IMG/VR virus record: IMGVR_UViG_3300042340_000379
Coordinates: 1-64,000 of that record
Reading direction: 5' to 3' (one strand)
Length of the DNA: 64,000 bases
Under the pieces are notes generated by a model. That model worked only from the letters and a program-made list of their open reading frames with translations, was not told where the DNA came from and made no database searches. Both the position numbers and the translations under genes were made by a program. Shown here piece by piece: positions 8,960-49,847 of the stretch (the stretch's first letter is position 1; each line of letters begins with the position of its first letter).

Positions 8960-8962
8960 CTT

Positions 8963-11819: not shown

Positions 11820-13975
11820 ATGCTTACCGCAGAATTCCGCCCTGGCACATTGGTTATCCTTTCTGGGGCCCCTGGTTCTGGTAAAAGCAGCCTAGCCGCT
11901 CAATACCCAGAGCATGTTGTTAGTTCAGACAATTTGCGAGCTACCTTCTTTGGCTATCAAAATGAGCTGATTGAAGAGCGCCCCACGTTCTATCTCTACG
12001 GAGTTGATTCGAGGGCATCTGAACGACCCAGAAATCTTGACGATGGATTTATCTTTGAAACCCTAGAAAAGATTGTCGATGTCCGTATGAAAAACGGGAT
12101 GACGACAATTGTAGATGCCACCAGCCCAACTGACACCGATCGCCACAAGTTCGCGAAGATTGCAGAAAAGTACGGTCGGCCCGTACTAATTTGCATCATG
12201 GATGTACCTAAGGAAACTCTCTACAAACGAAACGCCAGTAGAAAGTTCCCGGTTAGCAATAGCGTAGTTGATCGATTTGTAGACAAACTAGAGCTGACCA
12301 GCCATTGGCCCTACATCTTAAATCCTGAGTTACTAAACGTTAACTACTGGACAATCCAAGCTGATCAGCCCCTAGACATTATTGGGGATATTCATGGCTG
12401 CGTTGAGGTCATTAACTTAGTAGAACGGTTAGGTTATATGCATGGAGTTCACCCACAAGGGCGCAAACTTCTCTTCCTAGGAGATATGGTGGATCGCGGC
12501 CCCCATTCCTTAAAAGTTCTTGAGTTTGTTATGGGTTTAGTGAGCCAAGGACACTACTGTGTTCTTGCCAACCATGAAGCCAATCTGCTTAAAGGTCTAA
12601 AAGGTGAAGAAGTACGATCGCACGCAACCCGCCGCACTCTCCATGAAGTTCTGTTATCTGGTAAACAAAAAGAGATCCAAAAGTTTATCGAAGAGCGCCC
12701 CCCGTTCTATCTTTATGGAGTAGACACGTTAATCTGCCATGCAGACACAACAAGCTTCTTCTACAAATCTACACTCAAAGAAGCCGTTTATGGCACTTCT
12801 ACCCTAAGTCGAGCAGTAGATAGCGATGCAATATTCGCCGCGCATTACCCTAACCGCAGGTTAATTCGAGGTCATATTGCTGCAACTAGCCCTCAGCACA
12901 ACGTTTTTGCGCTAGAAGAAGGAGCAGGATATAGCGCGGGCTTTATAGTAGCCTGTCGAGCAAGCATTGGCGGAAACTCTCTAGAGTTCTTCCGCGAGCC
13001 CACCACGTTTGTGTACAAAGATCTTCCAAAGACTTTTGAGCAACGGATGGAGCCTCTAGTCAAGACTAAATTGGTAAATGTGGATAAGTGCGGCCCGCTC
13101 AAACTGTTTAAGTACAGCAGCAAGGCATTTTACAATCCTGAAACGTTTGCTGAAAATCCTGACTTAGGCCTCGCTCGAACTGTAGTAACAGGTTTAGATG
13201 GAGAGCCCATCGGGAGTACCTTTCCTAAAATCTACAACTATGGAGAAAAAGAAGCGCCTGAAATTGACCTTAACGAAGAAATCATCTGGGTTGAAAAGCT
13301 CAATGGATTCTTCGCGCAGGTTTTTCTTGACCCTTACTCTGTAAAGCCTAAGCTTATATACACCTCTTCAGGAAAGTTTACTGGAGAGTTTGCTGAAATG
13401 GCTCGCCAGAATATCCAGCAGTATTCTGGCGCTATTATTCGACTCTTCAAAACTTCAGACGTTAAAAACCTAATGTTTGAAATTGTTGACGCCAGAGACC
13501 CCCATATTGTGGATTACTCAGAAGAAGAGTATGGTGCCTATCTAATTGGAGCCGGATATAAAATGGGCTAGCTAGTGAGCATGTTCTAGACTACATGTCT
13601 CTTTCACTTGATGAGCTGCGCCGTCCATACCGCGGTCGCGCCACGTATAGGGAGGTACTAGAGAAAACAAAAGCATGTGATCGTGAAGGGTACATGGTTC
13701 GCAGTTTAACTGGAGAGCATCTCGTTAAACTGAAGTCTCCTACCTACCTAGCGATTAAATTCATCTCACGCATGAGCAATGAGAGCGACACCGTGATGTT
13801 CCGCAATCCAACTGTCACCAAGCAGAAGATTCGCGCTCGGGGGCTAGAAGAGCTACAATTCGTTGTAGATATAATAGTTGAACAGCTTACTGAGGAAGCA
13901 TGGAAAGCCATGAACTCAATCGAGCGGCGAGACTACCTTATTCCCCTAGTTAAGAGTGAGTATGCTTATGCTTGA
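11820..13975 (+). CDS. Polynucleotide kinase - metallophosphatase - RNA ligase (Pnkp/Rnl1-like RNA repair enzyme), with a frameshift at about 13560
   Basis: GAPGSGKS, VVSSD..R and IVDAT kinase motifs; IGDIHG, GDMVDRG and ANHE phosphatase motifs; ligase motif I EKLNG, FEIV, then REGYMV and VKLKS in the second frame (13595..13975). Confidence 0.85.
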
Positions 13976-14330: not shown

Positions 14331-14384
14331 GCTCGTTGTTTTTGGGATTGTATCAAGCAAGGCAACTGTCAAGGATTCCTTGAC

Positions 14385-14569
14385 TAATAAGCTATAATAT
14401 CGAAAAGTCTGGGCAGGAGCTTGCCCAAGACTCTAAATGGACGGGGAGGGTATGTAAGACTGGCTTGCCAGCAATGCCCGTTGAACCGTCAAGCCAGCCG
14501 TACAACGACCAACCTGGGTTGGTCGCTTAGCCGGAGAATCCTCTTCCTTTAGGTAGGGGAGCATGTCAA
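14385..14569 (+). mobile_element. Non-autonomous IS200/IS605 derivative: TnpB-type omega-RNA cassette with no ORF (copy 1)
   Basis: Ends in the IS605-type right end GAATCC..CCTTTAGGTAGGGGAG.ATGTCAA; carries a tnpB-3'-like scaffold (GGGCAGGAGCTTGCCC...AAATGGACG...TGTAAGAC...TTGAACCGTCAA); near-identical inverted copy at 28070-28254. Confidence 0.8.
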
Positions 14570-14629
14570 ATCTATTTTGCATCGCTATAGCATAAAATAG
14601 GAGAAACAACCCCTCCCTAAGAAAGAAAA

Positions 14630-15211
14630 ATGGTAGTATACAGCGCTAACGTTGAAAAGGTTTACGCTCCTTTTCAAGAAAATACCCAAGCAACCATTCC
14701 AGAAATTGTGGCTGCGGGGCCTATCACCCAAGCTAGATTGGGTGTAGATGCTCATGGGCATCCTGTTGAGACAGAAGTTGTCAATGAATTTCAACTTCCT
14801 AAGCTAAAAAAGATCCATGGGCAAGTTGCCGCCGCATTAGCCATGTGCGCATTCGGTGTTATAGCAGCACAGGTCGTAACAAAATACAGCAAACCGACCA
14901 GTATGTCTATACCGTCTACACTACAAGCGGAGTGTCCTGGTGGGTTGACACAAGGAAATCCCCTACCACCAGAAAAGCTATCAGCGGTCTCTTCTTATCT
15001 AAAAAGAGCGGCGGCTGACTTAAAATCAGAGCTTGGAAATCCTCTCTGTCAAACACCCCCAGTTGCGACCTCACAAGGGCAGGACGAAAGAGTGTTAGTT
15101 TATCAAACGGAAGTGGAAGGGCAGTTTGCATTATTTAACGTTGTAGGTTTTGGCCCAGCAGACTCTAAGAGGTATGTTGTAAATGCTGCAAACGTGGTAC
15201 AGATCCCATAA
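14630..15211 (+). CDS. hypothetical membrane-anchored protein
   Basis: Central TM segment. Confidence 0.65.
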   Translation: MVVYSANVEKVYAPFQENTQATIPEIVAAGPITQARLGVDAHGHPVETEVVNEFQLPKLKKIHGQVAAALAMCAFGVIAAQVVTKYSKPTSMSIPSTLQAECPGGLTQGNPLPPEKLSAVSSYLKRAAADLKSELGNPLCQTPPVATSQGQDERVLVYQTEVEGQFALFNVVGFGPADSKRYVVNAANVVQIP

Positions 15212-15551
15212 GCTCCTATTTTGGACTCCAATTGTAGGCATTATTTGTTTTTACATTGGCTACAATTGGATGGCAGCAGATTTAAGAGCCCGACTGTCAG
15301 AGTCCCATCTTCCTCCCAAAAAAGGGTCTCCAGTCAGAGAGGGGCCGTGTCGAGATCTTCTAAACAGGATGATACTCGAAAAAAGTCTTCCATTGGAGCT
15401 TGAAGCTCAAATTCATAACGCCCTAATATATAACAGCGTTGTTAAAGTTGAGGAAAAAGATAAAAAATGGGCCGAGCTGGCTATAGGTCAACTTCTAAAT
15501 GATGCACGAGCGGCACTAGAATGTGAGTACTCACAGCACATGCTAAAGTAA
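15183..15551 (+). CDS. hypothetical membrane protein
   Basis: N-terminal TM helix. Confidence 0.6.
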   Translation: MLQTWYRSHKLLFWTPIVGIICFYIGYNWMAADLRARLSESHLPPKKGSPVREGPCRDLLNRMILEKSLPLELEAQIHNALIYNSVVKVEEKDKKWAELAIGQLLNDARAALECEYSQHMLK

Positions 15552-15574
15552 GTTTAGCCTTTACTATTCGCGCT

Positions 15575-16087
15575 ATGTCTATATCTGATGCTACTCGCTT
15601 TTTAACAACCAATTTCCCTCTAAATTGGCAGAAAAAGGAAATTCTTTCTGAGGACGACGACTTAGCAGCGGTGTACCTATCTTGGATGGACGACTTTACA
15701 CCAGTCACAATCGAGTTTATCCTAGACTTAATACAAGGCTGCGTAAACTGTAAAGTAGACCTGTCAATTGGAGCAGAGCAGTTAAGCCAAATTGGTACGC
15801 CAGAAAGCTGTGTAGCATTCTGCAAAGACCAAATGCAGCAAGTTGCAAACCGGATGCTTCAAATCGCAGAGCCGTCCGTTTTGTTTCTTGACCGCAAAGT
15901 TGAATATAAAGATCTTCAGCCGCTTGAAACAAACGGCGAGGTCACTTTCCTTATTTCGCCAGACTACGACACAGTTGAGTTTGACCTGCTCAAAATCTGT
16001 AATCAGTATGTGGAAGGGGCCGTTCCAGTTAGGTTAAAACCCTGGAACAAACCTAAGTTAATGATGACTGTTCGCGCTCAAGATTAA
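15575..16087 (+). CDS. hypothetical protein
   Basis: 170-aa ORF. Confidence 0.65.
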   Translation: MSISDATRFLTTNFPLNWQKKEILSEDDDLAAVYLSWMDDFTPVTIEFILDLIQGCVNCKVDLSIGAEQLSQIGTPESCVAFCKDQMQQVANRMLQIAEPSVLFLDRKVEYKDLQPLETNGEVTFLISPDYDTVEFDLLKICNQYVEGAVPVRLKPWNKPKLMMTVRAQD

Positions 16088-16088
16088 G

Positions 16089-16103
16089 CTTGTACTGTAC
16101 AAA
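16089..16103. promoter_or_regulatory. palindromic site TTGTAYNRTACAA
   Basis: CTTGTACTGTACAAA, intergenic. Confidence 0.55.
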
Positions 16104-16190
16104 AATGTTACGTTGAAAATCCCCGATCTAATGTGCGCACATTAGACAGCAGCTAAGCAAGCTAAGATAAACAAAAACTTGTTTTGCTAA

Positions 16191-16757
16191 ATGCGCTTCT
16201 CCCTAGTAAAAAACGGCACAAATGTCTCTGAGAGTGATTCTCTCAGAGACATTTGTGCAAAGTTTAACCTTGTAATGAACCAGCTAGTCTTTCCTGATGT
16301 GGTCGAGATTGTATCTGGCACCTCAGTACTCGCAACAGTTAAGCCTAGCTCTCTGGTTTATGACAATAATGTTTTTCAACCTGAGGTAAGTCATTGGTTT
16401 AAAATTAACCCAACAGACAAGGAAAAAGACGCTTACTTTAAATGCCAAGAGGCAATCAGCATCTACTCAGATAGATGTATGAAACTCCTGCCAAAACCGT
16501 CAATCGTAAGCGGAGACATTAAAGTATGGTTGGAGATGGCAAGGCGGGTGCTAGAAAATGAACTTCCGATAGGAAATCCATATAGTACTAAAGCAGTTGC
16601 AACTCTTTCGGTATACCATCTTTACACTAAACCTCCCCAGCAGCGAGAGATAGTTAAAATTTTGACTCAGCTACGGCTAGCCTTGCTTTACTGCCATATT
16701 TCTATTTTTAGCAGTGCGGGGCCAGATACGGTTTATTATCTCAAGCCCTCCCGCTAG
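16191..16757 (+). CDS. hypothetical protein
   Basis: 188-aa ORF. Confidence 0.65.
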   Translation: MRFSLVKNGTNVSESDSLRDICAKFNLVMNQLVFPDVVEIVSGTSVLATVKPSSLVYDNNVFQPEVSHWFKINPTDKEKDAYFKCQEAISIYSDRCMKLLPKPSIVSGDIKVWLEMARRVLENELPIGNPYSTKAVATLSVYHLYTKPPQQREIVKILTQLRLALLYCHISIFSSAGPDTVYYLKPSR

Positions 16758-16920
16758 CCGCCAAGCGCGGCAGCAAGATACAAGCTTTCATCCCCCACCT
16801 AAGCAAAAAATGCAAAATATCACGGTACCGTGATACCCATGATTCTATCATTGAGATTAAAATGGAGACAAGCTGAATGACTTGGGGTTGTTTTGCTTTT
16901 GATCTCATGGGTAATGGGCA

Positions 16921-16955
16921 AAGGCGCTTATCAAAAGGTAAGCGCCTTATTTTTT
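16921..16955 (+). terminator. intrinsic terminator
   Basis: AAGGCGCTTA...TAAGCGCCTT plus T tract. Confidence 0.65.
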
Positions 16956-17084
16956 AAGCTGTTGTTCAAATTGCACACTTTGTAGCTATAATAAAAATAG
17001 TTGACGGGGGTTAACTTGGTTTGCGGGGTGTGTCATAGAAGCACCCCAGCAAATCTCTAATATTGACTACAGATAGAACAGTCA

Positions 17085-17122
17085 AAAGCGCCAGGATGAA
17101 ATAAACTTCTGGCGCTTTTTCT
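17085..17122. terminator. hairpin, possibly bidirectional terminator
   Basis: AAAAGCGCCAG...CTGGCGCTTTT. Confidence 0.55.
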
Positions 17123-17476
17123 ATGAAACCTAATATTTACCCTCTTGGTAATCACTCTTTCCAGCTATTCTGGCCAGAGCTGATTATGACCATTACATTC
17201 AAGTATCTAATTAACCAGCACAAAATAGAAAGTCCATTTGTAATTCAGCACTACCAAGGAAAACCTGTAGGTCAGCGCTATTTTGGATACTATGACGGCA
17301 CTCAGTATATTTCAGCAGAAGCGGGTGAAGTTACTCATGAAACACTCTGCCAAACCATCGCAATTACGGACAGTGACATAATTAGACCATGCGCGGTAAA
17401 CTTGTTTCAGAACTCTATTTTGAAACAAATTGATCATGGTTCGTATATCGTCGTCAAAGCAACACCAATACCCTAA
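17123..17476 (+). CDS. hypothetical protein
   Basis: 117-aa ORF. Confidence 0.55.
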   Translation: MKPNIYPLGNHSFQLFWPELIMTITFKYLINQHKIESPFVIQHYQGKPVGQRYFGYYDGTQYISAEAGEVTHETLCQTIAITDSDIIRPCAVNLFQNSILKQIDHGSYIVVKATPIP

Positions 17477-17496
17477 TCTAAAAAGGATTGTCCCAA

Positions 17497-18029
17497 TGCA
17501 AGAAAAGCTACTGTTGGGAGGAGGTTTCGCAGCATTAGTTTTTACTGTAGTATTCGCTCTGGCTAAAGGGGCAAAACTAGAAACTCCTTCAAGTGAATCT
17601 CTCATAGAAATTCCATTAGCCAAAACTGATGAAGGCCAACAATACGGCTTTGCAGCAGGTCAAGGCTTAGACGAGTTCTGTATTGCATCAGGTATGGGCG
17701 AGGTTACAATTAGCAAAAACGAAGAGTTTAATGCAATCGCCCCTTTTACTGGAGAAGTTAAGCAGATTGTTACAAAGCCAGGCTGCGAGCCCTGCCACTT
17801 TTATCAATCTCCTTTCTCTAACTACGCCCTTAAGCTGTGTGGAAACGCAAAAACAGGTAGCTACTCTAAGGGAGACGTTATAGCAACCAGTAAGCGCATG
17901 ACATTCGGCCTATTTGAGGCAATTCAGAACGAACCAGGTGCATCTCCAGTATACGAACCCAAGCCCCCAGCTGTAGGAGCTACTGAAAGTCAGTCCTACT
18001 TAAGAAAGGTGTTCCCTAACAATGAGTAG
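17497..18029 (+). CDS. membrane-anchored hypothetical protein
   Basis: MQEKLLLGGGFAALVF signal/TM start. Confidence 0.65.
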
Positions 18030-18315
18030 CTACCTAATCTCAAAAAGAAAAGCCCATCGACTCAACTCCAAAGTACCTGGAAAACACCCAGTTGTAAAAG
18101 ACGAAAGCCTGATAAATCTAATCAAGTTGCACCAAATTTGGTACAAACAAGAAGAAACCAAAAAGATTTTTAGAGCTCGCCATTACGGCCAGGATCAACC
18201 CTATACTTTGGAAAGCGCTTTTCCTGAAAGCAGCAGTAAACCGTCATATACGGCCTTAGTTGCAGAAGCTAAAGCTAGAGGTCTTTCTATACCAACCATT
18301 GATTTATGCCTATAA
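18022..18315 (+). CDS. hypothetical protein
   Basis: Overlaps neighbouring genes. Confidence 0.6.
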   Translation: MSSYLISKRKAHRLNSKVPGKHPVVKDESLINLIKLHQIWYKQEETKKIFRARHYGQDQPYTLESAFPESSSKPSYTALVAEAKARGLSIPTIDLCL

Positions 18316-18569
18316 GTTCAAAAGATACGTTAGTCAGTTTGATATCTCAAGACACAGGTCTGTCAGAAAAAACAGTCAGAGACGTTCTTACAGCTCTCTC
18401 GTCAGCAGTAGCTCAGGTCTTAAAAGAGCATAAAAAAGTAACCCTTTACGGTCTGGCAGTATGTGAAATAAAAAAGGCCGCAGATATGAGCACGATTGGA
18501 AGACCTATGACCCGCTCGGTTATTCAAATTCGACCGACCGCCACGTTCAAAAAGAACGTACTCAGCTAA
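18306..18569 (+). CDS. HU/IHF-family DNA-binding protein
   Basis: K.tLvs.Is..tgls...v...L.a, V.L.G, and terminal RPTATFKK pattern; 87 aa. Confidence 0.8.
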   Translation: MPISSKDTLVSLISQDTGLSEKTVRDVLTALSSAVAQVLKEHKKVTLYGLAVCEIKKAADMSTIGRPMTRSVIQIRPTATFKKNVLS

Positions 18570-18577
18570 GCTAAAAT

Positions 18578-18592
18578 TTTGTACTGTACAAA
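18578..18592. promoter_or_regulatory. palindromic site TTGTAYNRTACAA
   Basis: TTTGTACTGTACAAA, intergenic before ATG 18612. Confidence 0.55.
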
Positions 18593-18611
18593 TTTACCCC
18601 CGGAAACAACC

Positions 18612-19016
18612 ATGCAACTCACAATCACTGGAACTCCGACTGAGATTAAAGAATTCTTGAGTAAAGAATCTACTAAGCCTTTAGCAACAACGCTTGAGAT
18701 TCAAGAAGAAACTGCTGTAGATACTCAAGAGTCTAATGACTGCAATCTGTTTGAAAAAATTCTGGAAGTGTTGAAAGGAAATGAATTGTTTTTCCTTCCA
18801 ATAGGAAGTGAAAACTCAATCACAGCTAAAACCCTAGCCTACGACATTATTGAGATGATCGACGGCTATTCTACAGATGATTGGAACCAGGGAATAAACG
18901 CTCAACTTGTAAACTACATCAAACCTCTAGCTGCAGACCCTAATTCGGAAATTAAAATGGTAGATAACAGCGCTCTGCATTATCCGCATCTGTTCTACCG
19001 TACCCGCCTAAGCTAA
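18612..19016 (+). CDS. hypothetical protein
   Basis: ATG 18612 (MQLTITGTPTEIKEFL). Confidence 0.6.
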   Translation: MQLTITGTPTEIKEFLSKESTKPLATTLEIQEETAVDTQESNDCNLFEKILEVLKGNELFFLPIGSENSITAKTLAYDIIEMIDGYSTDDWNQGINAQLVNYIKPLAADPNSEIKMVDNSALHYPHLFYRTRLS

Positions 19017-19070
19017 AAGTTAAGAAATGCGCTAGTCTGGATAGAACCATCACTAGCGCATCAGTCGGTT

Positions 19071-20027
19071 ATGAAAAAATCTATAGCATCTCTATTTCTA
19101 GTTCTACTAAGCGCGGAACCAGCGCTGGCCTTATTTTCTACTACAGAGTACGAAATTGAAACTCCTCAAGCTATAGCAACAGTTAATGGAGTTGATTTAA
19201 AAAGAGTGCCCAACGCCCCGTTTAGAATCGCTATCTCAAGAAATAGCCCAGTTGGAGTTCTAAACCCAGACACCCAAATAAAAATTCTTGATGGGATTTC
19301 TAGAACTCAAGAAGAACTTACCCCTCCAAATGAGTTGAGTTCTGAAGTAGAAATTCAAGAAAAGGAACCCATTAAGATAGAGTTTAAGAGCCCCGCTGTT
19401 CGATTTCGCGTTAGCATTCCAGCTATTATCCAATCTAAAACAGATATTGCAAAGGCGAATGCCAATCCTGGAATAGGAGAAAATGAGTATATCCCTAGAG
19501 GCGGATTAGCCCGATCAGCTGAAAGAGTAATGGCTGACCCAGTAGGGGCCGCAGCTCTTGTTGATATTGCGAACCATTTAGGCCTAGATCCTACAGAGTT
19601 TATAGCTTTAATGTCTTGGGAAAGTGCTGGAACCCTAAATCCTAATGTCTTAGGAGGAGTTAAAAATTCCTACAAAGGACTTATTCAGTTCTCCCCTGGC
19701 AACGCTAAAAAATATGGGGTCACAGAGCAGATTAGCATTAGCCAATATGCGCCTGCTATTAAAGAATATCTGCTACATAGAGGATTTAAGCCAGGTGAAC
19801 ATAAAGACATTCGGTATGCTTACTCAGCTATTTTGGCCGGACAAGCCGGACAAAAATACTGGGGGCGAAAGGATAGCAATGGAACGAATGTTTGGAATGC
19901 TGAAAAGCACTTCAAATCAGGAGTTCACTATGAGCGGGCAAAAGCTTTCCTTGAGGCATCTCTAAAAGAAATGCCAGCTTCCAAACCCCAGCAGTATGAG
20001 ATTCCAGAAGTCGCTCTCTCATTTTAG
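19071..20027 (+). CDS. secreted lysozyme-like / lytic transglycosylase
   Basis: Signal peptide; ALMSWESAGTLNP...GLIQF lysozyme-fold motif. Confidence 0.75.
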   Translation: MKKSIASLFLVLLSAEPALALFSTTEYEIETPQAIATVNGVDLKRVPNAPFRIAISRNSPVGVLNPDTQIKILDGISRTQEELTPPNELSSEVEIQEKEPIKIEFKSPAVRFRVSIPAIIQSKTDIAKANANPGIGENEYIPRGGLARSAERVMADPVGAAALVDIANHLGLDPTEFIALMSWESAGTLNPNVLGGVKNSYKGLIQFSPGNAKKYGVTEQISISQYAPAIKEYLLHRGFKPGEHKDIRYAYSAILAGQAGQKYWGRKDSNGTNVWNAEKHFKSGVHYERAKAFLEASLKEMPASKPQQYEIPEVALSF

Positions 20028-20634
20028 AACCGTGCGGATAAAATTACCCTTTAGAGCCCTTTTAGTAATCTTGCTACTGGGCTCTTTTATTTTAAGCCTC
20101 TCTTTTACTAACAAGCCCACCACAGTTGACCAAAAACCTAAAGTACAGATTGCTCAAGTTGAAAAAATTGAAGGGGAACCACAGCCCACAACAGAAAAGT
20201 TTACAGCCCCCTCTGGATTTGCGGCCACTTCTTTTCCAGTAGGAAGTTTTCAAGGCTATACCTCTGCCTTTGGATACAGGGTTCATCCAATGAATAGAAC
20301 CACACGTTTTCACTATGGGCTCGATATTAGTGGGCCATTAGGCTCACCTCTATATGCTTGGGCAACTGGAACTGTAGTCAGAGCCCAGCATACAGACAAT
20401 AATACATGTGGAAAATATGTAGAAGTTAAATCTGGCGTTTGGACAAGTTTATACTGCCACGCCGATAGTGTGCTTGTAAACGTGGGCGATCAAGTGAAAG
20501 CAGGCGAGTTAATCGCGACATTAGGAACGACTGGATCTTCTACTGGCCCACATCTTCACTGGGGACTCAAGTATGATGGTCAGTGGGTAGATCCAAACAT
20601 TGTTCTTTTGGAGATGAAGAATATTCAATCATGA
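19996..20634 (+). CDS. M23 family metallopeptidase with N-terminal TM
   Basis: TSAFGYRVHP, HYGLD, Y.H, GSSTGPHLHW, VDP. Confidence 0.92.
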   Translation: MRFQKSLSHFRTVRIKLPFRALLVILLLGSFILSLSFTNKPTTVDQKPKVQIAQVEKIEGEPQPTTEKFTAPSGFAATSFPVGSFQGYTSAFGYRVHPMNRTTRFHYGLDISGPLGSPLYAWATGTVVRAQHTDNNTCGKYVEVKSGVWTSLYCHADSVLVNVGDQVKAGELIATLGTTGSSTGPHLHWGLKYDGQWVDPNIVLLEMKNIQS

Positions 20635-21458
20635 CTCAATTTACTCAACAGCAACTTGACGACAGCCGAGCAGGAAAATTCTCCAAGTTTCTTACAGAGA
20701 ACCCTACCAGGCAGCTAATTTCTTTGAGCGAGGAAGAAAAAGACGATCTTATAAAACAGCCAACGCCTATAATTGACAACGCCAAAAATGAGATTCTGCT
20801 TATTTTGTTAAGAGCCCTGCAAAAAAATCCTCTGGCTCAAGAAAGAGTTTACTCTGCTTATCTAAAGCAACCAGAGCTGCTGCTCCCAAAAATCCTCCTT
20901 TTACTTACAGGAAGAACTATCTCATACGAGCTCAAGTCAAAGCTAGTTTTAGGTGAGAAGGAAGAAGTTTACCGAGTCTCTATCTCCAAAAATTCAATTA
21001 GGGTGAAGTTTGAAAACTATCTCCCGGCTATCCATGCCGACGAGAAGGGAGAAGTGGTAAATATTTCACTAGCAGAGATAGATACAACAACTGGAGTTCA
21101 TCCTGTTGTAAAAGTCTATGCTTCTCTTTCGAGCAGAAAACCAATCAGCTCTTCATTAGCAGGAGCCCACCGCACAAAGATCAAGGCAACACTCGATCTG
21201 GATCAAACTTTTAACTCTGACCAATGGGCATTTTTGCGCTTGATCGTTGCCCTTCCAGATCAAAAATGGGAGGGGTTTAGCGTTTTTGTAAACCTAGTCC
21301 ATACTAAATCGGCTGAAATAGAAGCAGCGGCAAAAGAAGCGCTAAATGATTTTTTGGCTGAGAGGGGCACCAAAGAGTACAGAATTTTTCTGGATATCGC
21401 TGACTGGGGCCCTCTCAGTAAAATTCAGCTGCAAGCTAAAGCCCACGAGTTCACTTAA
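20631..21458 (+). CDS. hypothetical protein
   Basis: ATGA-coupled start at 20631. Confidence 0.65.
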   Translation: MTQFTQQQLDDSRAGKFSKFLTENPTRQLISLSEEEKDDLIKQPTPIIDNAKNEILLILLRALQKNPLAQERVYSAYLKQPELLLPKILLLLTGRTISYELKSKLVLGEKEEVYRVSISKNSIRVKFENYLPAIHADEKGEVVNISLAEIDTTTGVHPVVKVYASLSSRKPISSSLAGAHRTKIKATLDLDQTFNSDQWAFLRLIVALPDQKWEGFSVFVNLVHTKSAEIEAAAKEALNDFLAERGTKEYRIFLDIADWGPLSKIQLQAKAHEFT

Positions 21459-21663
21459 AAAGTGACCTCGCGTGAGAATGGTAAGCCCAGATTAACTGGC
21501 AGCGATTCTTCACTCCATAGATTTTCATGAGTTCTGTTAAGTAGTCAGACACTGTCTGCGCTTGCACATTCAGCTTATGAGCAATTGCTTTTGTGTTGGG
21601 ATCGCCATAGCATAGCTCAAACAGAACCGTCCTTTGAGCGAGTGGAAGTTGATTTGTAAGCAT
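21451..21663 (-). CDS. LuxR-type helix-turn-helix regulator
   Basis: L...QR.VL..L..G..TKAIA.KLNV..QTV..YL..LMK..GVKNR.QL. Confidence 0.8.
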   Translation of the reverse strand: MLTNQLPLAQRTVLFELCYGDPNTKAIAHKLNVQAQTVSDYLTELMKIYGVKNRCQLIWAYHSHARSLFK

Positions 21664-21697
21664 CTTTATTCAAAAATATAAACAAGCTATTAGTCGA

Positions 21698-22834
21698 ATG
21701 CACAATGGAATTATTTTGTACGAGGGCCCTTCATTATTAAATGGAGAGCCCATTGTTGTTATTTTGACAGGTCTAAGGGCACCGTCAGCCAACTCTAAAA
21801 CTGGCCCAATGGCTCAAGTTTGGGTTCTCCCTCAAGAGATCCCGTCAGCAGCAATCAAGGAAAAAAGAGATAACTCGGTTTGCGGAGACTGCCCCCTTAA
21901 AAGCGGTATATGTTATGTAAATCCAATCACTCTAAATAACGTGTATAGAGCCTGGGTTAAAAAGTTGTACGGCTCAACAGAAAAAGATATCGCTCAGGCC
22001 ATCAAACATATCAAACTCCATAGATGCAAAGTTCGACTGACAGCGTATGGTGAAGCGCCTGCTGCTCCCTATGAAGTTTTCGAGCCCTTCCTTAAAAGCT
22101 ATACTGGTTACACCCACCAATGGAAAAATCCCTCTATTGACCAACGGTGGAAAGGTAAACTTCAAGCGTCTGTTCACTCTCTCCCCGAAGCTGAAGAAGC
22201 CTGGGCAGCAGGTTGGTCAACGTTTAGAATCACACTTCCCCATGAGAAACCTACAGAGAATGAAACCTTGTGCTTGTATATGAGCAAGGGCCTTCAATGT
22301 TCGTCTTGTGGGTTGTGTAACGGGAAAAAGAACATTACAGATCCTATTCACGGTCTTGCTCATAAGCAAACCACTTTCAAAACTATGCGCACTAGCTATA
22401 AACCTGCTCCTAAATCTAGATACCTAAAAGCTAACCACCGTTTCTTTCATGGCACCTCGGCTGATTTCTTTAATGAACCTAAAGCCCCATTCTGGTTGAC
22501 TACCAGCGAAGAAAAAGCCCAAAGGTTCTCTGTTCCGCATGAAAACGGATATGAACCTCGAGTGCTAGCCTACAGGCTAAAACGTGGGCGCATTTTTGTA
22601 TATGACACAGAAAGTGCTTTGGACTATCTCTTTGGAAAAGAAAACATTAAACTGCTCGCATCACTATGCCAGAGTGAGCGCAACAGAAAAATTGCAGAAT
22701 TAGTTATGCGTGATCTTGCTTATGATGGAGTTCTTTTTGTAAATGATAGCGGGAAAGACGAACATAGTCTTGTAGTTTTAAATCCGACCATCATCGAAGC
22801 TGCAAAAATGCCAAAGCTTAAAATTGACCACTAG
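21698..22834 (+). CDS. Cys-rich phage protein (gp88 / radical-SAM-like) fused to a C-terminal ADP-ribosyltransferase-like domain
   Basis: NSKTG, CGDCPL..CYV, YTHQW, ASVHS, C..CGLC; C-terminal FFHGT, FWLTTS...A..FS and YDGV...E. Confidence 0.55.
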   Translation: MHNGIILYEGPSLLNGEPIVVILTGLRAPSANSKTGPMAQVWVLPQEIPSAAIKEKRDNSVCGDCPLKSGICYVNPITLNNVYRAWVKKLYGSTEKDIAQAIKHIKLHRCKVRLTAYGEAPAAPYEVFEPFLKSYTGYTHQWKNPSIDQRWKGKLQASVHSLPEAEEAWAAGWSTFRITLPHEKPTENETLCLYMSKGLQCSSCGLCNGKKNITDPIHGLAHKQTTFKTMRTSYKPAPKSRYLKANHRFFHGTSADFFNEPKAPFWLTTSEEKAQRFSVPHENGYEPRVLAYRLKRGRIFVYDTESALDYLFGKENIKLLASLCQSERNRKIAELVMRDLAYDGVLFVNDSGKDEHSLVVLNPTIIEAAKMPKLKIDH

Positions 22835-22878
22835 GCTTTAGCTTCTCTTGGTAGAGTAGAAGAAGCTTGAGCCTACCT

Positions 22879-23952
22879 ATGTCAATCCCAATCCAGTCTA
22901 AATTTTCAGCAGTTCAAGACCGTCGGCCAGTTCCTACCAGCCTAATTCCTGGAGAGTTGACTGTAGGTACACATACCTCTAGCCCAGGAGTGTACTTTAG
23001 AGACTCAGATAACAATCTAGTAAAAGTAGGGCCAACGCACATAGGTGCTTCAGCCCCTACTCCAACAAACCACGCGGTTATTCTTAAAGGAGAAACGTGG
23101 TGGGATGGGAACTCCATGAGAATATGGAGCGGAACTCAATGGGAAATTACAAATAGATTAAGCACAGATTTTCCTCTCCCTTTCTCTTTTCCAGAGATAC
23201 AACTCTCAAATCCTACCGGGAGCTCAATAAGTTTTTCCCAAGGGGCAGTTGTTTTATCAGATAACTCTGATAACCGATTATCTGTAAAAGCCACATCTGT
23301 TATTACTAAAAGCATATCAACATGGGCAGCTGGTGATGGTAACGGTTCTTTAATTGGCGGTTCAATAACTAACAATACTTGGTACCACGTATTTTGTATT
23401 CATAATCCAACAGCCAGTCTGACCGACTTTGCAATCGCTCCAACACTGACCCCGTCTCTTCCCAGTGGGTATACATTTAAGAGACGCTTGGGGTCTCTCT
23501 TAATAAATGCGGCGAGCTTTATAACTAAGTTCTTTCAGCAGGGCTCTCTATTCTTACTAGAAGAACCTCTCTATGACCTTATTGGAGTGAGAGTTCCAAC
23601 AACCAAAACAAATTATAAAGTTTCGGCCCCACCTAACGTCATTTCAAATGTAAAAGGAATACTTAGCCCTGGGCTTGCTGAAGTAGGGTCAACACTTGCG
23701 GTTAATGCGTTTAACCCTTCTATAGTTCTTGTAGCCGGGGCCAGTCCTGGGCAAGCAAGAGGAGCCAACCAAGCGTATAGCTCCTTAAACTATTTAGGTA
23801 CAGACTATGTTGTTAGTTCACATCCAGCTTGGATTACAAATGCAAGCTCAGAACTAGCTTTTCAGTCTAGCGGAACCTACAGAAACAGCGTAGGTTCAAC
23901 AACGTTTTTGACTTATGGTTGGGAAGATCTAAGTTTAGTAAGGGGCTTGTAA
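22879..23952 (+). CDS. tail fibre-like virion protein
   Basis: N-terminal PGEL...PGVYF.DS...VKVGP.H and GETWWDG..W cyanophage fibre motifs; WAAGDGNG..TWYH..P.GYT..RRLGS. Confidence 0.7.
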   Translation: MSIPIQSKFSAVQDRRPVPTSLIPGELTVGTHTSSPGVYFRDSDNNLVKVGPTHIGASAPTPTNHAVILKGETWWDGNSMRIWSGTQWEITNRLSTDFPLPFSFPEIQLSNPTGSSISFSQGAVVLSDNSDNRLSVKATSVITKSISTWAAGDGNGSLIGGSITNNTWYHVFCIHNPTASLTDFAIAPTLTPSLPSGYTFKRRLGSLLINAASFITKFFQQGSLFLLEEPLYDLIGVRVPTTKTNYKVSAPPNVISNVKGILSPGLAEVGSTLAVNAFNPSIVLVAGASPGQARGANQAYSSLNYLGTDYVVSSHPAWITNASSELAFQSSGTYRNSVGSTTFLTYGWEDLSLVRGL

Positions 23953-23954
23953 TT

Positions 23955-24692
23955 ATGCCATTCTTCAAAGACAATGGGTTAGGAGCCCCAGATTTTGCTT
24001 CTGGAGGAACTCAATGGGCAACAAACTCACACACAATTTTTTCATCTAATGCAAGTTATGACACCTATTTAAGTACAATTCCCGCTTTACCTAGTCCTAC
24101 AGTATCTTGGGATAACGTAAGCAGCAAGCCCTCAACTTTCCCGCCAAACGACACGACTTACCGAAGAATCTTACGCCACGTTTTTAATGGCACAACACAC
24201 ACTCTCACTATTAACTTTGCGGATCTTGGATTCTCAAATCCGACAGCTCTAAAATGGTCGTTTCGACTGGGTGGCACTAGAAATAACAACCCGCTTTTCT
24301 ATATGCGGTTTAATAATGTTGCGACGAACAGCAGTTATGCTGGCCGTTTTATATATAGTGGCCTTAGTGGCTCTACCGCCGATGCTAGTACCGGTGATAA
24401 CAATGCCACATTTTTAGGTAACCTCTACCTTATTGAATCAAACAATCACAACCCAATTATTGAGTTGTTTTGCTCAGGGGAAATAGCTGTGTCAAGCAAT
24501 CGGATCTACTGTCACCACACATCTCTTAGACATATAGACAACGTAACTGCTTGTGACCAGGTCATAAGATGCACGGCTGCATTTATACCCCCTCCTATCA
24601 CAACACTACAATTTAGTTGTTACTCTAACTCACTTCAAACTTTCGTTAATATCCCGAATAATTCTGTGTTTGAGATTCACTCTATTTCATGA
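23955..24692 (+). CDS. putative tail fibre / virion protein
   Basis: W.NV..KPSTFPP tail-fibre repeat; N/S/T-rich. Confidence 0.6.
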   Translation: MPFFKDNGLGAPDFASGGTQWATNSHTIFSSNASYDTYLSTIPALPSPTVSWDNVSSKPSTFPPNDTTYRRILRHVFNGTTHTLTINFADLGFSNPTALKWSFRLGGTRNNNPLFYMRFNNVATNSSYAGRFIYSGLSGSTADASTGDNNATFLGNLYLIESNNHNPIIELFCSGEIAVSSNRIYCHHTSLRHIDNVTACDQVIRCTAAFIPPPITTLQFSCYSNSLQTFVNIPNNSVFEIHSIS

Positions 24693-25165
24693 AGGAAATT
24701 ATGTTTTTGAAAAATGGTGACCAAGTAGCGGTTAATGAACAAACGTTCAGCTTGCAAGAATTTCAAGCACTAGAACCCGACTATGAATGTGAATATCTAC
24801 TCGAAAGTTACGGCCCTGATGGGCACTGGGTCAGCAATGGCCCTGGAACAGAGCGAGTGGATGGGTCAACTCTCTACCCTTCCAGACAGTCTTATCTAGA
24901 CAAAACCTATATCCTGCCTAGGGAGAAGGACTGGCTTCAACTAATTCAAGACGTAAACCTAGGGCCAATCTTGATGCCCTGGATGCTTCAGAATGCCAAC
25001 CCGAATAGCTTTTCATATCTGCTGGCAGTGGTTAATAACACGCACCGACAACCCTGGATGCTATATACAGCTCTAGGATTAGTTTTCCCTGGCGCTCCTG
25101 ACGAAATAAAGACAGAGCTAAACCAGGTGCTTTTAGACAATAATTTCAAAGAGATAGCTTTTTAA
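24689..25165 (+). CDS. hypothetical protein (possible fibre assembly)
   Basis: Coupled to the fibre genes. Confidence 0.6.
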   Translation: MKEIMFLKNGDQVAVNEQTFSLQEFQALEPDYECEYLLESYGPDGHWVSNGPGTERVDGSTLYPSRQSYLDKTYILPREKDWLQLIQDVNLGPILMPWMLQNANPNSFSYLLAVVNNTHRQPWMLYTALGLVFPGAPDEIKTELNQVLLDNNFKEIAF

Positions 25166-25339
25166 GCCATGACCAAATATTTTAGGAAACCTTCGGAACT
25201 CTGCGGGGACAGGCCTTAATGGCACTTTAACAGCACGAGCAGTGAGTTCACCAATTTCCCCATCGGTACATCCATGCTCGTTATGGCTGACGGTATCGTT
25301 TAATCAAAGACGGGGCTCAGACCCTGGCCTATTTAAGAT

Positions 25340-25354
25340 TTTGTATCGTACAAA
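25340..25354. promoter_or_regulatory. palindromic site TTGTAYNRTACAA
   Basis: TTTGTATCGTACAAA upstream of the HTH gene 25395. Confidence 0.55.
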
Positions 25355-25394
25355 AAATGCGCTAGGCTTTGATTAACCTTTAAGTCTTTGATTA

Positions 25395-25616
25395 ATGCTC
25401 CCTCCAGCTCTACAAGATTACATGCAGACGCTGTACCAGATGTGGGTACAGACAGGAGAAACTTCTGACAAGGCTTTAGCGGCTGAATTAGGAATAGAAG
25501 CTGACTCTGTAAGACAAAGAAGGGTACGCTTGTATTCAATAGTGCTTCCTGACGGGAGCCCAAGAACAATACCGAATCTTCTAAGATACTACTTGAAGAA
25601 TGCCCAGATTATCTGA
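25395..25616 (+). CDS. helix-turn-helix protein
   Basis: SDKALAAELGIEADSVRQRR.RL; palindromic site at 25340-25354 upstream. Confidence 0.7.
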   Translation: MLPPALQDYMQTLYQMWVQTGETSDKALAAELGIEADSVRQRRVRLYSIVLPDGSPRTIPNLLRYYLKNAQII

Positions 25617-25657
25617 AAGCGCTTTTGTTACCGTTAGAGAATGATTCCTCCTCTAAC

Positions 25658-26314
25658 ATGCTAGAAGACGCATTCCAGAAGAAAAACATAAATAAGGCCG
25701 TGCATCTTACGCACAACCTTCTATATACAACCGGGTATATAAAAACCAGCCAGGCCTTAGCCTCCCTCCCAACCGACCAACGGCTATGGCAACGGCAGAA
25801 CGGAGTTCTCCCTAAAGCCTTAAAGCAAATCTCAAAAACTTTCTCGTATGATGTCTATGGTGTAGTCCAAGATATTGAGTCGGGTTATGGAATAGTTCAA
25901 AGCTGCCCATCCATAAGGGCTGAGACCCTTGGTATTGATGGTTTTGAAGGCCACCCAACTCTAACGTATACGATTGGCCTAAGTGAAACCGTTAGAGCGC
26001 CCGAGTTTGTTGTCTCCGGTCTGGAACCTAAAGATGCGCATGAACTCTTAACTAACCTAGTTGAGTACCTTGTGCAAAAAACATATATTGATCTTGGGGA
26101 GCCGCTCACCTTGTACGGTAAGAAACTCCTATTTAAACAGTTTGATCCTAACCTCCAGATGTTAATGCCTATCTTGCAGTGGTATAATTCGTTCGAGCCT
26201 GTACATACCTGTCAAGTATTATGGACTCCATACCCCTGGAATGAGGGCACCCAAAAGTTATACTGGAGCTGTCCATTTAAATATGCTTACCCTAACCCAA
26301 AGCATCACCCCTGA
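25658..26314 (+). CDS. DUF4262-like protein
   Basis: TYTIGL....PEFVVSGL and QVLW..YPW motifs. Confidence 0.6.
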   Translation: MLEDAFQKKNINKAVHLTHNLLYTTGYIKTSQALASLPTDQRLWQRQNGVLPKALKQISKTFSYDVYGVVQDIESGYGIVQSCPSIRAETLGIDGFEGHPTLTYTIGLSETVRAPEFVVSGLEPKDAHELLTNLVEYLVQKTYIDLGEPLTLYGKKLLFKQFDPNLQMLMPILQWYNSFEPVHTCQVLWTPYPWNEGTQKLYWSCPFKYAYPNPKHHP

Positions 26315-28073
26315 AATCCAACAAGCTGACCCAGCCGATCATGCTTTTGACTACATAGTCAACCAACGCCAATCTATCTGCCTCTTTGGCCAGCCTGGAA
26401 CCGGCAAAACCACCTTAGTTAAAAGGATTTATGACGCTCTGAAAGATCAGGGCGTTTATACTATCTGTACAGCCTTCCCAGGTAAAGCGGCTATGCTGTT
26501 GCCTGGAAAGCCTATGACTTCCTCTAAGCTAGCTAATATTCGGCTGGGTCACCTAAGTTACTATCCCGATACCGATCACACCTATCGAAACAAAGTATTT
26601 GACAACGGTCTCTATATAGAAGACAGCAAAGGCTGCAGTCGGCAGTCAATCACAACTGCAGTTGAAGATGCCTGCCAAGCGTTTACAAAACCTTATCTTG
26701 TCATTATTTTTGACGAGATTTCTATGGCTAGCGCTCAGCATCTACATCTTTTCTATGAGGTCGTCAGGATGAAGCGAGAGAGAGCAGGCCTTTCTATCAA
26801 AGACGTAACCTGGCTTTTAGTTGGAGACTTTGGCCAGCTGCTTCCTCCGGACAACAACACTCAATTGATGTTTGAGCGGCCCAAGTTTGCTGTCCAAACT
26901 AACCAGCGAGAGCAGACTAGCTTTGAAAAGCCTTCATTCTTTGAGCTTGTTAACTGTAAAGTTGTTACGCTGACCAAAATTTGGAGGCAGGCTGACCCTA
27001 GCTATCTCCAAGCTATCAACTGGGCTTATTGGGGCAAAGCTGTTCACCCATCGTTCATCCAGCGAATTGGAATAGAACCCCCTGAGCACGCTGTGAAAGT
27101 GATGTTCAATAATCAGGAGGTCTTAAGGGAGAACAAACGGTATGTTGAGAACTTTATTACCCGCAATCCTGGTTGTAAAATTCAAGAGTTTAGAGCTACC
27201 CATAACTGCACTAGGCATGAATTGAAAGAGCTTGAACCCATCGGGGAATCTTTCACCCTAGCCGTAGCCTTTAACTCAGATGGCTCTCTCAAAGAAAGCA
27301 TGCCATTTATGTGCGCGGTGAATCTGCTTGACGAAAACGGTGACATGATCATTGCGAATGGCGAAACCGTCGAAGTTATTAACATTTTGGGCCCTAAGTC
27401 AATTAAAGTTAGAAAGCACAATAACCAAGAACTAACTTTAGGATTTAACCCCCACCCTGTTTCTCCCAGACGCGATGGATTTGAACCGCAGTTTTATCAG
27501 CTACCTGGCTACCCTGGTTGTACTTCTTCTCTTTATAAGTGCCAAGGTCAAACCTTTGGCCCAGGAGAAGCCCGAATATATGGTACTTGGGAATATGGCC
27601 CTCGCCGGGAGCCCGCGCCTATTCGTCGGCATGGAGCCCTGATCGTAATGGTCAGCCGCAACCAAAACTTAGAGGATGTTTACTTTGACACACAATCTCT
27701 TTCAGGGAAAGCTCAATGTATAGATTTTCTTAAGTCGTCAGTGTATGTAAACGAAAAGTGCATTAGGTTTATGCTAGACGGCAAGCGGCCAACCTGGATA
27801 TCTGACGAGGGTAAAGACGTTTACCTAATAGAGCTAAAAAAAGTCAAAGCAATTACAGGAGGCTATGATTTCTTTTTTGACTACTTTGACTTAGAAGAAG
27901 ACTGCGAGAAATCTGCATATAAAGTTAGGATCAAAGAAGGGAATGTTATATGCGCTGCTAAAAACAAAGTTCCCCTGCAACTTTCTAACGGTAAGGCTAA
28001 GCTATTTAAGAAGCTCGCCAAGATTTGGATAGAAGACTACCTACCCCAGAACATTTACACCATAGAGATTTGA
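26283..28073 (+). CDS. PIF1/RecD-like SF1B helicase
   Basis: GQPGTGKT, IFDEISM, VGDFGQLLP, LTKIWRQ, NG..V, YKCQGQT, VMVSR. Confidence 0.9.
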   Translation: MLTLTQSITPEIQQADPADHAFDYIVNQRQSICLFGQPGTGKTTLVKRIYDALKDQGVYTICTAFPGKAAMLLPGKPMTSSKLANIRLGHLSYYPDTDHTYRNKVFDNGLYIEDSKGCSRQSITTAVEDACQAFTKPYLVIIFDEISMASAQHLHLFYEVVRMKRERAGLSIKDVTWLLVGDFGQLLPPDNNTQLMFERPKFAVQTNQREQTSFEKPSFFELVNCKVVTLTKIWRQADPSYLQAINWAYWGKAVHPSFIQRIGIEPPEHAVKVMFNNQEVLRENKRYVENFITRNPGCKIQEFRATHNCTRHELKELEPIGESFTLAVAFNSDGSLKESMPFMCAVNLLDENGDMIIANGETVEVINILGPKSIKVRKHNNQELTLGFNPHPVSPRRDGFEPQFYQLPGYPGCTSSLYKCQGQTFGPGEARIYGTWEYGPRREPAPIRRHGALIVMVSRNQNLEDVYFDTQSLSGKAQCIDFLKSSVYVNEKCIRFMLDGKRPTWISDEGKDVYLIELKKVKAITGGYDFFFDYFDLEEDCEKSAYKVRIKEGNVICAAKNKVPLQLSNGKAKLFKKLAKIWIEDYLPQNIYTIEI

Positions 28074-28254
28074 CATGCTCCCCTACCTAAAGGAAGAGGA
28101 TTCTCCGGCTAAGCGACCAACCTGGGTTGGTCGCTGTACGGCTGGCTTGACGGTTCAACGGGCATTGCTGGCAAGCCAGTCTTACATACCCTCCCCGTCC
28201 ATTTAGAGTCTTGGGCAAGCTCCTGCCCAGACTTTTCGATATTATAGCTTATTA
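28070..28254 (-). mobile_element. Non-autonomous IS200/IS605 derivative: TnpB-type omega-RNA cassette (copy 2)
   Basis: Reverse complement of 14385-14569 with about 3 differences; its TCAA end overlaps the helicase stop codon. Confidence 0.8.
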
Positions 28255-28269
28255 ATAAAAGGAAAGATA

Positions 28270-49708: not shown

Positions 49709-49847
49709 AAATGTGACTATCTCGATTAAAGCTGAGCAACACAAAAAGGAAACTTGGAGAACCGACCGCAAAATTGGCATCCAAGTTTCCTTGCCTCCTT
49801 AATCTCAAGAATAAAGCTAACACTGCACAAAACAAAAAGGAAACATC

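What the first reader, a model, noticed from the sequence alone, without database searches (positions are those of the whole stretch)
14385..28254. Two protein-less TnpB-type omega-RNA cassettes with different 3' guide flanks
Seen: near-identical 185-bp elements at 14385-14569 (+) and 28070-28254 (-). Each begins with TAATAAGC-TATAAT and ends in the IS605 right-end hairpin plus TCAA, with no tnpA or tnpB in the window. The flanks after TCAA differ (ATCTATTTTGCATCGC vs ATCTCTATGGTGTAAA), and the second is antisense to the 3' end of the helicase gene. Established: TnpB omega-RNAs take their guide from the sequence 3' of the right end. Inference: these are MITE-like elements that express guides for a TnpB or TldR supplied in trans, protecting the insertion or excluding element-free phages.
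Basis: partly seen in the sequence, partly recalled or inferred. Interest (0 to 1): 0.6.

Follow-up and report, generated by a model that had tools for sequence, protein, structure and literature searches.

The report
Orphan TnpB guide-RNA modules in cyanophage
Two nearly identical 185-base inserts in a 208-kb freshwater cyanophage are gene-less leftovers of a host transposon that still encode the whole scaffold of its TnpB guide RNA; this kind of element is known, and whether these two are used is untested.

Summary
Two 185-nt copies (14385-14569 +, 28070-28254 -) differ at 3 bases, sit between genes and have unrelated flanks. They are homologous to the last ~150 nt of a tnpB gene plus the right end (RE) of an IS200/IS605-family element. 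That element is common in one order of filamentous cyanobacteria (23 of 173 genomes), the likely host lineage. A covariance model built from host copies alone scores the phage copies at 172 and 171 bits, as high as held-out host copies. The fold has 22 of 29 pairs with compensatory changes. All copies end in GAAT-hairpin-...TCAA and diverge right after TCAA, so the two different 3' flanks lie where guides lie.

The elements lack the left-end hairpin, so they are not classical PATEs/MITEs. The window has no tnpA or tnpB, and the phage has no tnpA. The phage does carry three tnpB genes at 86.8-96.1 kb, all from other subfamilies. The cognate subfamily is found in candidate host genomes.

Function in trans is plausible but untested. 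No RNA data and no empty-site allele were found. There is only a lone TATAAT, and only copy 1 has a TAM-like left flank. Protein-less omega-RNA elements are already described, so this is a modest variant.

The parts
14385..14569 (+). Cassette 1: 185-nt protein-less omega-RNA/right-end module, co-directional with the flanking genes
   Evidence: Repeat. 172 bits against the host-only model R2. Homologous to tnpB 3' ends plus RE.
28070..28254 (-). Cassette 2: same module, antisense to the flanking genes. Its TCAA end supplies the TGA stop of the helicase ORF.
   Evidence: Identical copy in a second sample.
14393..14398 (+). Lone consensus -10 hexamer TATAAT (copy 2: 28241-28246, - strand). It lies where host copies encode K-N-I of the RuvC-III motif.
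   Evidence: Sequence. Host copies read AAAAAT/AAGAAT there. No -35 partner was found.
14406..14432 (+). Stem 1 hairpin (copy 2: 28207-28233). Read on the opposite strand it is terminator-like.
   Evidence: MFE fold. Terminator-like hits.
14439..14490 (+). Three-tier helix with the conserved GTAAGAC core (copy 2: 28149-28200)
   Evidence: RNAalifold helices 1-3 with compensatory changes.
14506..14525 (+). Palindromic hairpin whose loop is flipped between the copies (copy 2: 28114-28133)
14536..14561 (+). GAAT plus the subterminal RE hairpin (copy 2: 28078-28103). 34 of 37 terminal nt match the RE of phage TnpB1.
14562..14569 (+). CATGTCAA terminus. TCAA is the RE boundary in every family copy (copy 2: 28070-28077).
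   Evidence: All 40+ copies diverge right after TCAA.
14570..14589 (+). Putative guide 1 (ATCTATTTTGCATCGC...)
   Evidence: Position 3' of the RE. No second target in the phage or in 5 host genomes beyond controls.
28050..28069 (-). Putative guide 2 (ATCTCTATGGTGTAAA...), antisense to the helicase 3' end
14380..14384 (+). Left flank TTGAC, which matches the family target/TAM (TGAC variant)
   Evidence: Host left flanks are TTAC or TGAC and covary with the LE guide AAAG or CAAG.
28255..28259 (-). Left flank TTTAT, one mismatch from TTAC
   Evidence: compared.

Best explanation
Each repeat is a 5'-truncated, protein-less derivative of an IS200/IS605-family element. That family has a divergent tnpA plus tnpB, a TTAC/TGAC target and a GAAT-hairpin-TCAA right end, and it is native to the phage's likely hosts, filamentous cyanobacteria of the order that includes a Phormidesmidales MAG. 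What remains is the segment that in full elements overlaps the last ~50 tnpB codons plus the right end, which is the omega-RNA scaffold. All of its conserved helices are intact (shown). Copy 1 could be transcribed by read-through, and either copy from the lone TATAAT at its 5' edge. That would give an omega-RNA whose guide is the adjacent 16-20 nt of phage DNA (inferred). A TnpB supplied in trans would load it (inferred). The candidate is the cognate subfamily in the host, or possibly phage TnpB1, whose guide-proximal hairpin matches 34 of 37 nt. The complex would cut phage genomes in which the TAM directly abuts the guide, meaning cassette-free alleles, which favours retention or homing of the cassette. 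Identity as an omega-RNA/RE relic: about 0.95. Active use as a trans guide: about 0.35.
For: Homology: BLAST hits in 23 of 173 genomes of the host order. In most, cassette nt 12-185 equal the tnpB 3' end plus RE. The cassette frame still reads the TnpB C-terminal tail.
Structure: 29 pairs, 22 with compensatory changes; 93.8% paired against 77.5% shuffled and 31-45% slid.
Leave-out model R2: cassettes 172 and 171 bits against 124-170 for held-out host copies.
Boundary: every copy diverges after TCAA.
Removing 28070-28254 keeps the helicase C-terminus and restores a stop-RBS-ATG junction.
Partners: the cognate family is in candidate host G001 (76-93% identity) and keeps D-E-D. The phage carries an intact TnpB1.
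The phage TnpB1 RE hairpin resembles the cassettes rather than its closest host relatives.
The cassette is present at the same site in a strain about 2.3% diverged and in several lakes.
Precedent: PATEs encode omega-RNAs that TnpB acts on in trans (PMC10055086); a PATE-derived RNA is expressed and active (PMC4615843).
Against: There is no expression evidence; no RNA run holds the phage.
No -35/-10 pair is present, only a lone TATAAT.
Neither phage TnpB belongs to the cognate subfamily. Their own 3' regions score only 43 and 35 bits on R2.
Copy 2's left flank, TTAT, is not the family TAM.
No empty-site allele was seen, so there is no current target.
The same genome holds shorter, clearly non-scaffold RE relics of 66 and 44 nt, which shows that plain decay products persist here.
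The Rfam gathering threshold was not reached; the best hit is HgcC at E=0.048.
Confidence: 0.4

Rival explanations
1. Inert debris. The cassettes are non-functional remnants of host IS insertions that lost the left end and tnpB. They persist because they are short, intergenic and harmless.
For: The phage holds other RE-only relics: 66 nt at G000 193999-194064, 100% identical to host REs, and two 44-nt copies at 191980-192023 and 166886-166929. 5'-truncated tnpB copies are common in hosts (L103, L109, L101/L116). There is no tnpA in the phage, no full promoter and no RNA data.
Against: Both copies keep the entire scaffold with every helix and score as high as live host copies. They differ by only 3 nt, none of which breaks a helix. 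A perfect TATAAT sits at the 5' edge where host copies have none. The cassette is kept in a strain about 2.3% diverged.
Confidence: 0.35
2. Recombination substrate. The two inverted ~190-bp repeats mainly act as homology for inversion of the 13.5-kb segment between them, giving genome isomers. The omega-RNA origin would then be incidental.
For: One 549-nt contig of run X3 joins the left flank of copy 2 to a cassette carrying copy-1 alleles and the right flank of copy 1. That is the junction an inversion would produce. IR-flanked invertible segments are reported in freshwater cyanophages (10.64898/2026.02.14.705889).
Against: A single short-read contig through a repeat may be an assembler path. 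The reference arrangement is bridged in the 208-kb record and in a second sample. All genes inside and outside the segment are on the + strand.
Confidence: 0.15
3. Cis-regulatory hairpins. The inserts act as terminators or insulators between phage genes rather than as guide-RNA genes.
For: Stem 1 read antisense is terminator-like. In copy 2 it lies on the + strand just after the helicase gene.
Against: In copy 1 the same hairpin faces the wrong way. The count of terminator-like sites is within the shuffle expectation. This does not explain conservation of the whole 185-nt scaffold.
Confidence: 0.05

Closest known systems
PATEs (palindrome-associated transposable elements) of IS200/IS605 that encode omega-RNAs
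   Same: No protein. They retain the RE and the omega-RNA-coding segment. The guide would come from the 3' flank and TnpB must act in trans (PMC10055086; PMC4615843). True PATEs of this same family exist in host genome G065.
   Different: The phage copies lack the LE subterminal hairpin. Only about 8-11 nt of uncertain origin precede the tnpB-derived part. They sit in a phage and have a lone TATAAT at the 5' edge.
IS608 (Helicobacter pylori), the IS200/IS605 paradigm
   Same: Host relatives insert 3' of TTAC, end in TCAA, and carry AAAG 5' of the LE hairpin and GAAT 5' of the RE hairpin. Those are the IS608 motifs as I recall them (own knowledge), seen here. The LE guide and the target covary: AAAG with TTAC, CAAG with TGAC.
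   Different: The sequence family and host are different, and the cassettes have no LE, tnpA or tnpB.
ISDra2-type TnpB omega-RNA
   Same: The scaffold overlaps the tnpB 3' end and RE, and the guide lies immediately 3' of the RE boundary (established knowledge: Karvelis 2021, cited).
   Different: No sequence similarity was tested or claimed. The TAM here is TTAC/TGAC by inference, not TTGAT.
sotRNA / Rfam HgcC (RF00062), ncRNAs at tnpB 3' ends
   Same: The weak HgcC match covers the RE-like hairpin. HgcC shares the RE-like tetraloop motif with tnpB 3' RNAs.
   Different: 18.8 bits against a gathering score of 50, so the cassettes are not members.
Phage-borne tnpB in cyanophage A-1(L)
   Same: A freshwater cyanophage carrying host-derived tnpB, with speculation about roles in homing or inversion.
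   Different: That case is a full tnpB identical to host copies. Here there are also orphan guide-RNA modules.

Membership tests
Omega-RNA / right end of the host IS605-family tnpB subfamily (MKARYQYRIYPT... type) | Sequence homology to the tnpB 3' end plus RE of full elements | tested here: met
   68-93% identity to copies in 23 of 173 genomes. In full elements the match begins about 30 nt before the end of the tblastn-aligned tnpB and runs to TCAA.
Omega-RNA / right end of the host IS605-family tnpB subfamily (MKARYQYRIYPT... type) | Fits a covariance model built without the phage copies | tested here: met
   R2 (32 host sequences): 171.8 and 171.1 bits, full length. Held-out host copies score 124-170 bits.
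Omega-RNA / right end of the host IS605-family tnpB subfamily (MKARYQYRIYPT... type) | Conserved secondary structure supported by covariation | tested here: met
   22 of 29 pairs have compensatory changes. 93.8% of cells are paired, against 77.5% shuffled (0 of 500 reach it) and 31-45% slid.
Omega-RNA / right end of the host IS605-family tnpB subfamily (MKARYQYRIYPT... type) | RE terminus: GAAT, subterminal hairpin, TCAA, with flanks diverging right after | tested here: met
Omega-RNA / right end of the host IS605-family tnpB subfamily (MKARYQYRIYPT... type) | A cognate TnpB available | tested here: inconclusive
   None in cis. The phage has three tnpB genes of other subfamilies. The cognate subfamily is present in candidate host genomes, including G001, but the host is inferred, not shown.
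Omega-RNA / right end of the host IS605-family tnpB subfamily (MKARYQYRIYPT... type) | Transcribed and processed into an RNA carrying a 3' guide | not testable with these tools
   No RNA run holds the phage.
Omega-RNA / right end of the host IS605-family tnpB subfamily (MKARYQYRIYPT... type) | Guides TAM-dependent DNA cleavage | not testable with these tools
   Needs biochemistry or interference assays.
PATE / MITE of IS200/IS605 | No protein-coding gene | tested here: met
   Only the last ~50 codons of tnpB remain.
PATE / MITE of IS200/IS605 | Both LE and RE subterminal hairpins | tested here: not met
   The LE hairpin (...CCTTTAGGG... type), present in the G065 MITEs and in full elements, is absent from the cassettes and their flanks.
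PATE / MITE of IS200/IS605 | Insertion immediately 3' of the family target (TTAC or TGAC) | tested here: inconclusive
   Copy 1 has TTGAC (fits). Copy 2 has TTTAT (one mismatch).
PATE / MITE of IS200/IS605 | Several copies with unrelated flanks | tested here: met
   Two copies, with flanks unrelated.
Rfam curated families (HgcC RF00062 and all others) | Score at or above the gathering threshold | tested here: not met
   No gathering hit. HgcC scores 18.8 bits against 50.
TldR-type (nuclease-dead TnpB) guide RNA | Association with a RuvC-inactivated TnpB homologue and a guide matching a regulated promoter | tested here: not met
   No such gene is adjacent. Phage TnpB1 and TnpB2 and the host family keep D-E-D. 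The guides match only their own flanks.

The most novel reading that the evidence does not exclude
The phage keeps promoter-equipped, immobile omega-RNA genes that borrow a TnpB nuclease, either the host's cognate enzyme or its own TnpB1, whose guide-proximal hairpin has been made alike. The complex would cut cassette-free sibling or competitor phage genomes during co-infection. That would be an RNA-guided gene-drive or exclusion device split between virus and host. The inverted pair might in addition drive a 13.5-kb genome isomerisation.
Probability: 0.15. Interest if true: 0.7.

Novelty: new variant of a known kind. Interest (0 to 1): 0.42.

Why it matters
If the cassettes are used, they would show that the guide-RNA half of a TnpB system can live apart from its nuclease, on a virus, and be served by a host or a distantly related phage enzyme. 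That would extend the in-trans modularity proposed for PATEs to phage-host and phage-phage conflict. It would also offer a natural test of how far TnpB and omega-RNA pairs can be cross-matched. If they are not used, the locus is still a clean record of IS traffic from a filamentous cyanobacterial host into its phage. It also gives a strong host-assignment clue: a 66-nt relic 100% identical to host copies, and a TnpB 92% identical to one in a Phormidesmidales MAG.

Tried and rejected
- GenBank phages: no match to the cassette or to the helicase region.
- IMG/VR exact-pattern scans: nothing. A degenerate core pattern gave one chance hit inside a coding region, which R2 rejected.
- Two metagenome pattern scans: nothing.
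- Relatives of the flanking proteins in IMG/VR: none.
- Empty-site alleles: not found. Contigs of 4 lake runs show no joint. Exact-protein look-ups returned only cassette-bearing contigs.
- Second targets for the guides: none in the phage. In 5 candidate host genomes there were only 2-mismatch hits, on the same scale as the reversed-pattern controls.
- The idea that the first 11 nt (TAATAAGCTAT) are a remnant of the LE terminus (host CAAAAGCGAT...): rejected as unproven. The loose motif occurs about 30 times in the phage.
- Flank paralogy as the source of the duplication: rejected.
- Phage TnpB1 or TnpB2 as the direct parent of the cassettes: rejected. Only the terminal 37 nt match, and R2 gives 43 and 35 bits.
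- Sigma-70 promoter pair: none.
Full report
OBSERVATION
The window holds one long inverted repeat, 14380-14573 against 28066-28259 (194 nt, 97%). The cores 14385-14569 (+) and 28070-28254 (-) are 185 nt and differ at three bases. These are 14505 A/G, and 14515-16 TG/CA, the flipped loop of a palindromic hairpin. Both copies begin TAATAAGC-TATAAT and end in a hairpin followed by CATGTCAA. Four more bases (ATCT) are shared and then the flanks diverge. Flanks 300 nt out share nothing beyond chance.

Both copies are intergenic. Copy 1 lies between two + strand ORFs. Copy 2 lies on the - strand between a PIF1/AAA_30-type helicase ORF and a 792-aa ORF. The helicase TGA stop is inside the element's TCAA. 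Removing 28070-28254 cleanly would leave the same helicase C-terminus with a TAA stop, followed by an AAGGA ribosome-binding site and the next ATG. Removing copy 1 would rejoin an 8-bp palindrome to a T-rich tract. The 185-nt unit therefore looks like the inserted unit (inference).

CONTEXT
The window is bases 1-64000 of a 207,855-bp IMG/VR virus record, estimated 97% complete. It comes from lake-water metagenomes. Outside the window the phage carries three tnpB-type genes:
- TnpB1: 94903-96072 (+). It matches OrfB_IS605, Cas12f1-like_TNB and HTH domains and has an intact D-E-D.
- TnpB2: 86774-87973 (-).
- A shorter third gene: 88748-89761 (-).
The phage has no Y1 tnpA. TnpB1 has relatives at 75-92% identity in many filamentous cyanobacteria. 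The best is a Phormidesmidales MAG, handle G001.

WHAT THE REPEATS ARE
BLAST of the cassette against the 173 genomes of G001's order hits 23 of them, at 68-93% identity and often in several copies. In most hits, cassette nt 12-185 coincide with the 3' end of a tnpB gene and the DNA downstream of it. This tnpB subfamily begins MKARYQYRIYPT. It is 41% identical to phage TnpB1 and about 35% to TnpB2. The cassette frame still reads that subfamily's C-terminal tail (NIEKSG...GLVA*).

In genome G154 the full element is 1804 nt, with a divergent tnpA, and it is flanked by TTAC on the left in 3 of 3 copies. Other copies have TTAC or TGAC on the left. This covaries with AAAG or CAAG just 5' of the left-end hairpin. 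Every copy has GAAT, a subterminal hairpin and ...TGTCAA on the right, and flanks diverge immediately after TCAA. These are the IS608 motifs as I recall them (own knowledge).

An alignment of 38 copies gives a consensus fold of 29 pairs, of which 22 show compensatory changes. Paired cells are 93.8%, against 77.5% in shuffles (0 of 500 reach it) and 31-45% when partners are slid. A covariance model built from 32 host copies only scores the phage cassettes at 171.8 and 171.1 bits over its full length. Held-out host copies score 124-170 bits. The cassettes are therefore bona fide members of this element's omega-RNA/right-end family. Rfam has no family that reaches threshold. The best hit is HgcC at 18.8 bits. 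HgcC is itself linked to tnpB 3' RNAs.

WHAT THEY ARE NOT
Genome G065 holds true MITEs of this family, with the left-end hairpin and a TGAC flank. The phage cassettes lack that hairpin. Homology to tnpB fades at about nt 8-12, and the first bases are of uncertain origin. They are therefore 5'-truncated right-end modules, not classical PATEs.

The parent is neither phage tnpB. Only the terminal 37 nt match TnpB1's right end. The 3' regions of TnpB1 and TnpB2 score 43 and 35 bits on R2.

There is one notable detail. TnpB1's terminal hairpin and the GAGCATGTCAA tail match the cassettes at 34 of 37 nt. They differ from the closest host relatives of TnpB1 in G001, which are 93-94% identical just upstream but carry the usual ...CGTGCC...GGTCGGGGAGGATGTCAA form. 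That points to sequence exchange between the cassette and the TnpB1 right end inside the phage. It is the only hint that TnpB1 might accept the cassette RNA.

OTHER RELICS
R1 found further right-end fragments in the phage:
- 66 nt at 193999-194064, 100% identical to host copies in G001 and G076.
- Two copies of a 44-nt hairpin+TCAA unit, at 191980-192023 (+) and 166886-166929 (-).
So two classes of truncated right-end modules each occur twice, each with the same truncation point. How units without a left-end hairpin are copied is unexplained.

FUNCTION
No RNA run holds the phage. Contigs from four lake runs show the cassette at site 1 in every run that covers it. One of these strains is about 2.3% diverged. 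No run shows an empty-site joint. A second JGI sample bridges copy 2 in the reference arrangement with an identical cassette.

There is no -35/-10 pair, only a lone perfect TATAAT where host copies read AAAAAT or AAGAAT. Copy 1 could also be transcribed by read-through. The guides match nothing else in the phage, or in five candidate host genomes, beyond controls. Copy 1's left flank (TTGAC) fits the family TAM. Copy 2's (TTTAT) does not.

The trans-guide model has precedent in the literature on PATEs. Here it is plausible and untested, and I put it at about 0.35. Inert debris is about equally likely.

One X3 contig joins copy 2's left flank to copy 1's right flank, which is the junction expected of an inversion isomer. 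It may also be an assembler path through the repeat.

VERDICT
The functional reading is open. Protein-less omega-RNA elements are known. The new aspects are the phage location, the lack of a left end, the junctional -10 box, and the hairpin shared with a non-cognate phage TnpB.

Noticed in passing
G000 86774-96119 (outside the window; loci L003, L005, L006, L152-L154): A cluster of three tnpB-type genes, each with its own GAAT-hairpin-TCAA right end. TnpB1 lies directly downstream of a tRNA gene. No tnpA is present anywhere in the phage.
   Followed up: partly
G000 193999-194064 (+); 191980-192023 (+); 166886-166929 (-): Right-end-only relics. One is a 66-nt piece 100% identical to host copies (G001, G076). 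The others are two copies of a 44-nt hairpin+TCAA unit with the same truncation point and different flanks.
   Followed up: partly
window 14385-14742, run X3 record 4: A 549-nt contig carries copy 2's left flank, a cassette with copy-1 alleles, and copy 1's right flank. This is the junction expected if the 13.5-kb segment between the inverted cassettes inverts. It could also be an assembly path through the repeat.
   Followed up: partly
L145-L147 (G154), L087, L093, L113, L090, L112: In host elements the 4 nt 5' of the left-end hairpin covary with the left flank: AAAG with TTAC, CAAG with TGAC. This follows the IS608-style rule for recognising the cleavage site.
   Followed up: partly
window 7141-7270 (+): A tRNA match (54.7 bits) with a 60-nt insertion in the anticodon loop that ARAGORN did not call. 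An ordinary tRNA-Lys(UUU) lies at 8885-8960.
   Followed up: no
window 30429-30537 (+): Three perfect tandem copies of a 36-nt unit inside the 3' part of the 792-aa ORF (28270-30648), which has no Pfam match.
   Followed up: no
window 49625-49812 (+): Two adjacent 88-nt direct repeats, 70% identical, 100 nt apart.
   Followed up: no
window 14457-14496, runs X3, X5 and X7: Very deep short contigs (up to about 150x) match only the conserved scaffold core and continue into tnpB-like sequence. Cyanobacteria carrying this IS family appear abundant in the same lakes.
   Followed up: no
window 11820-13571 (+): A 583-aa ORF upstream of cassette 1 with precomputed AAA_33 and Metallophos hits (polynucleotide kinase/phosphatase-like).
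   Followed up: no
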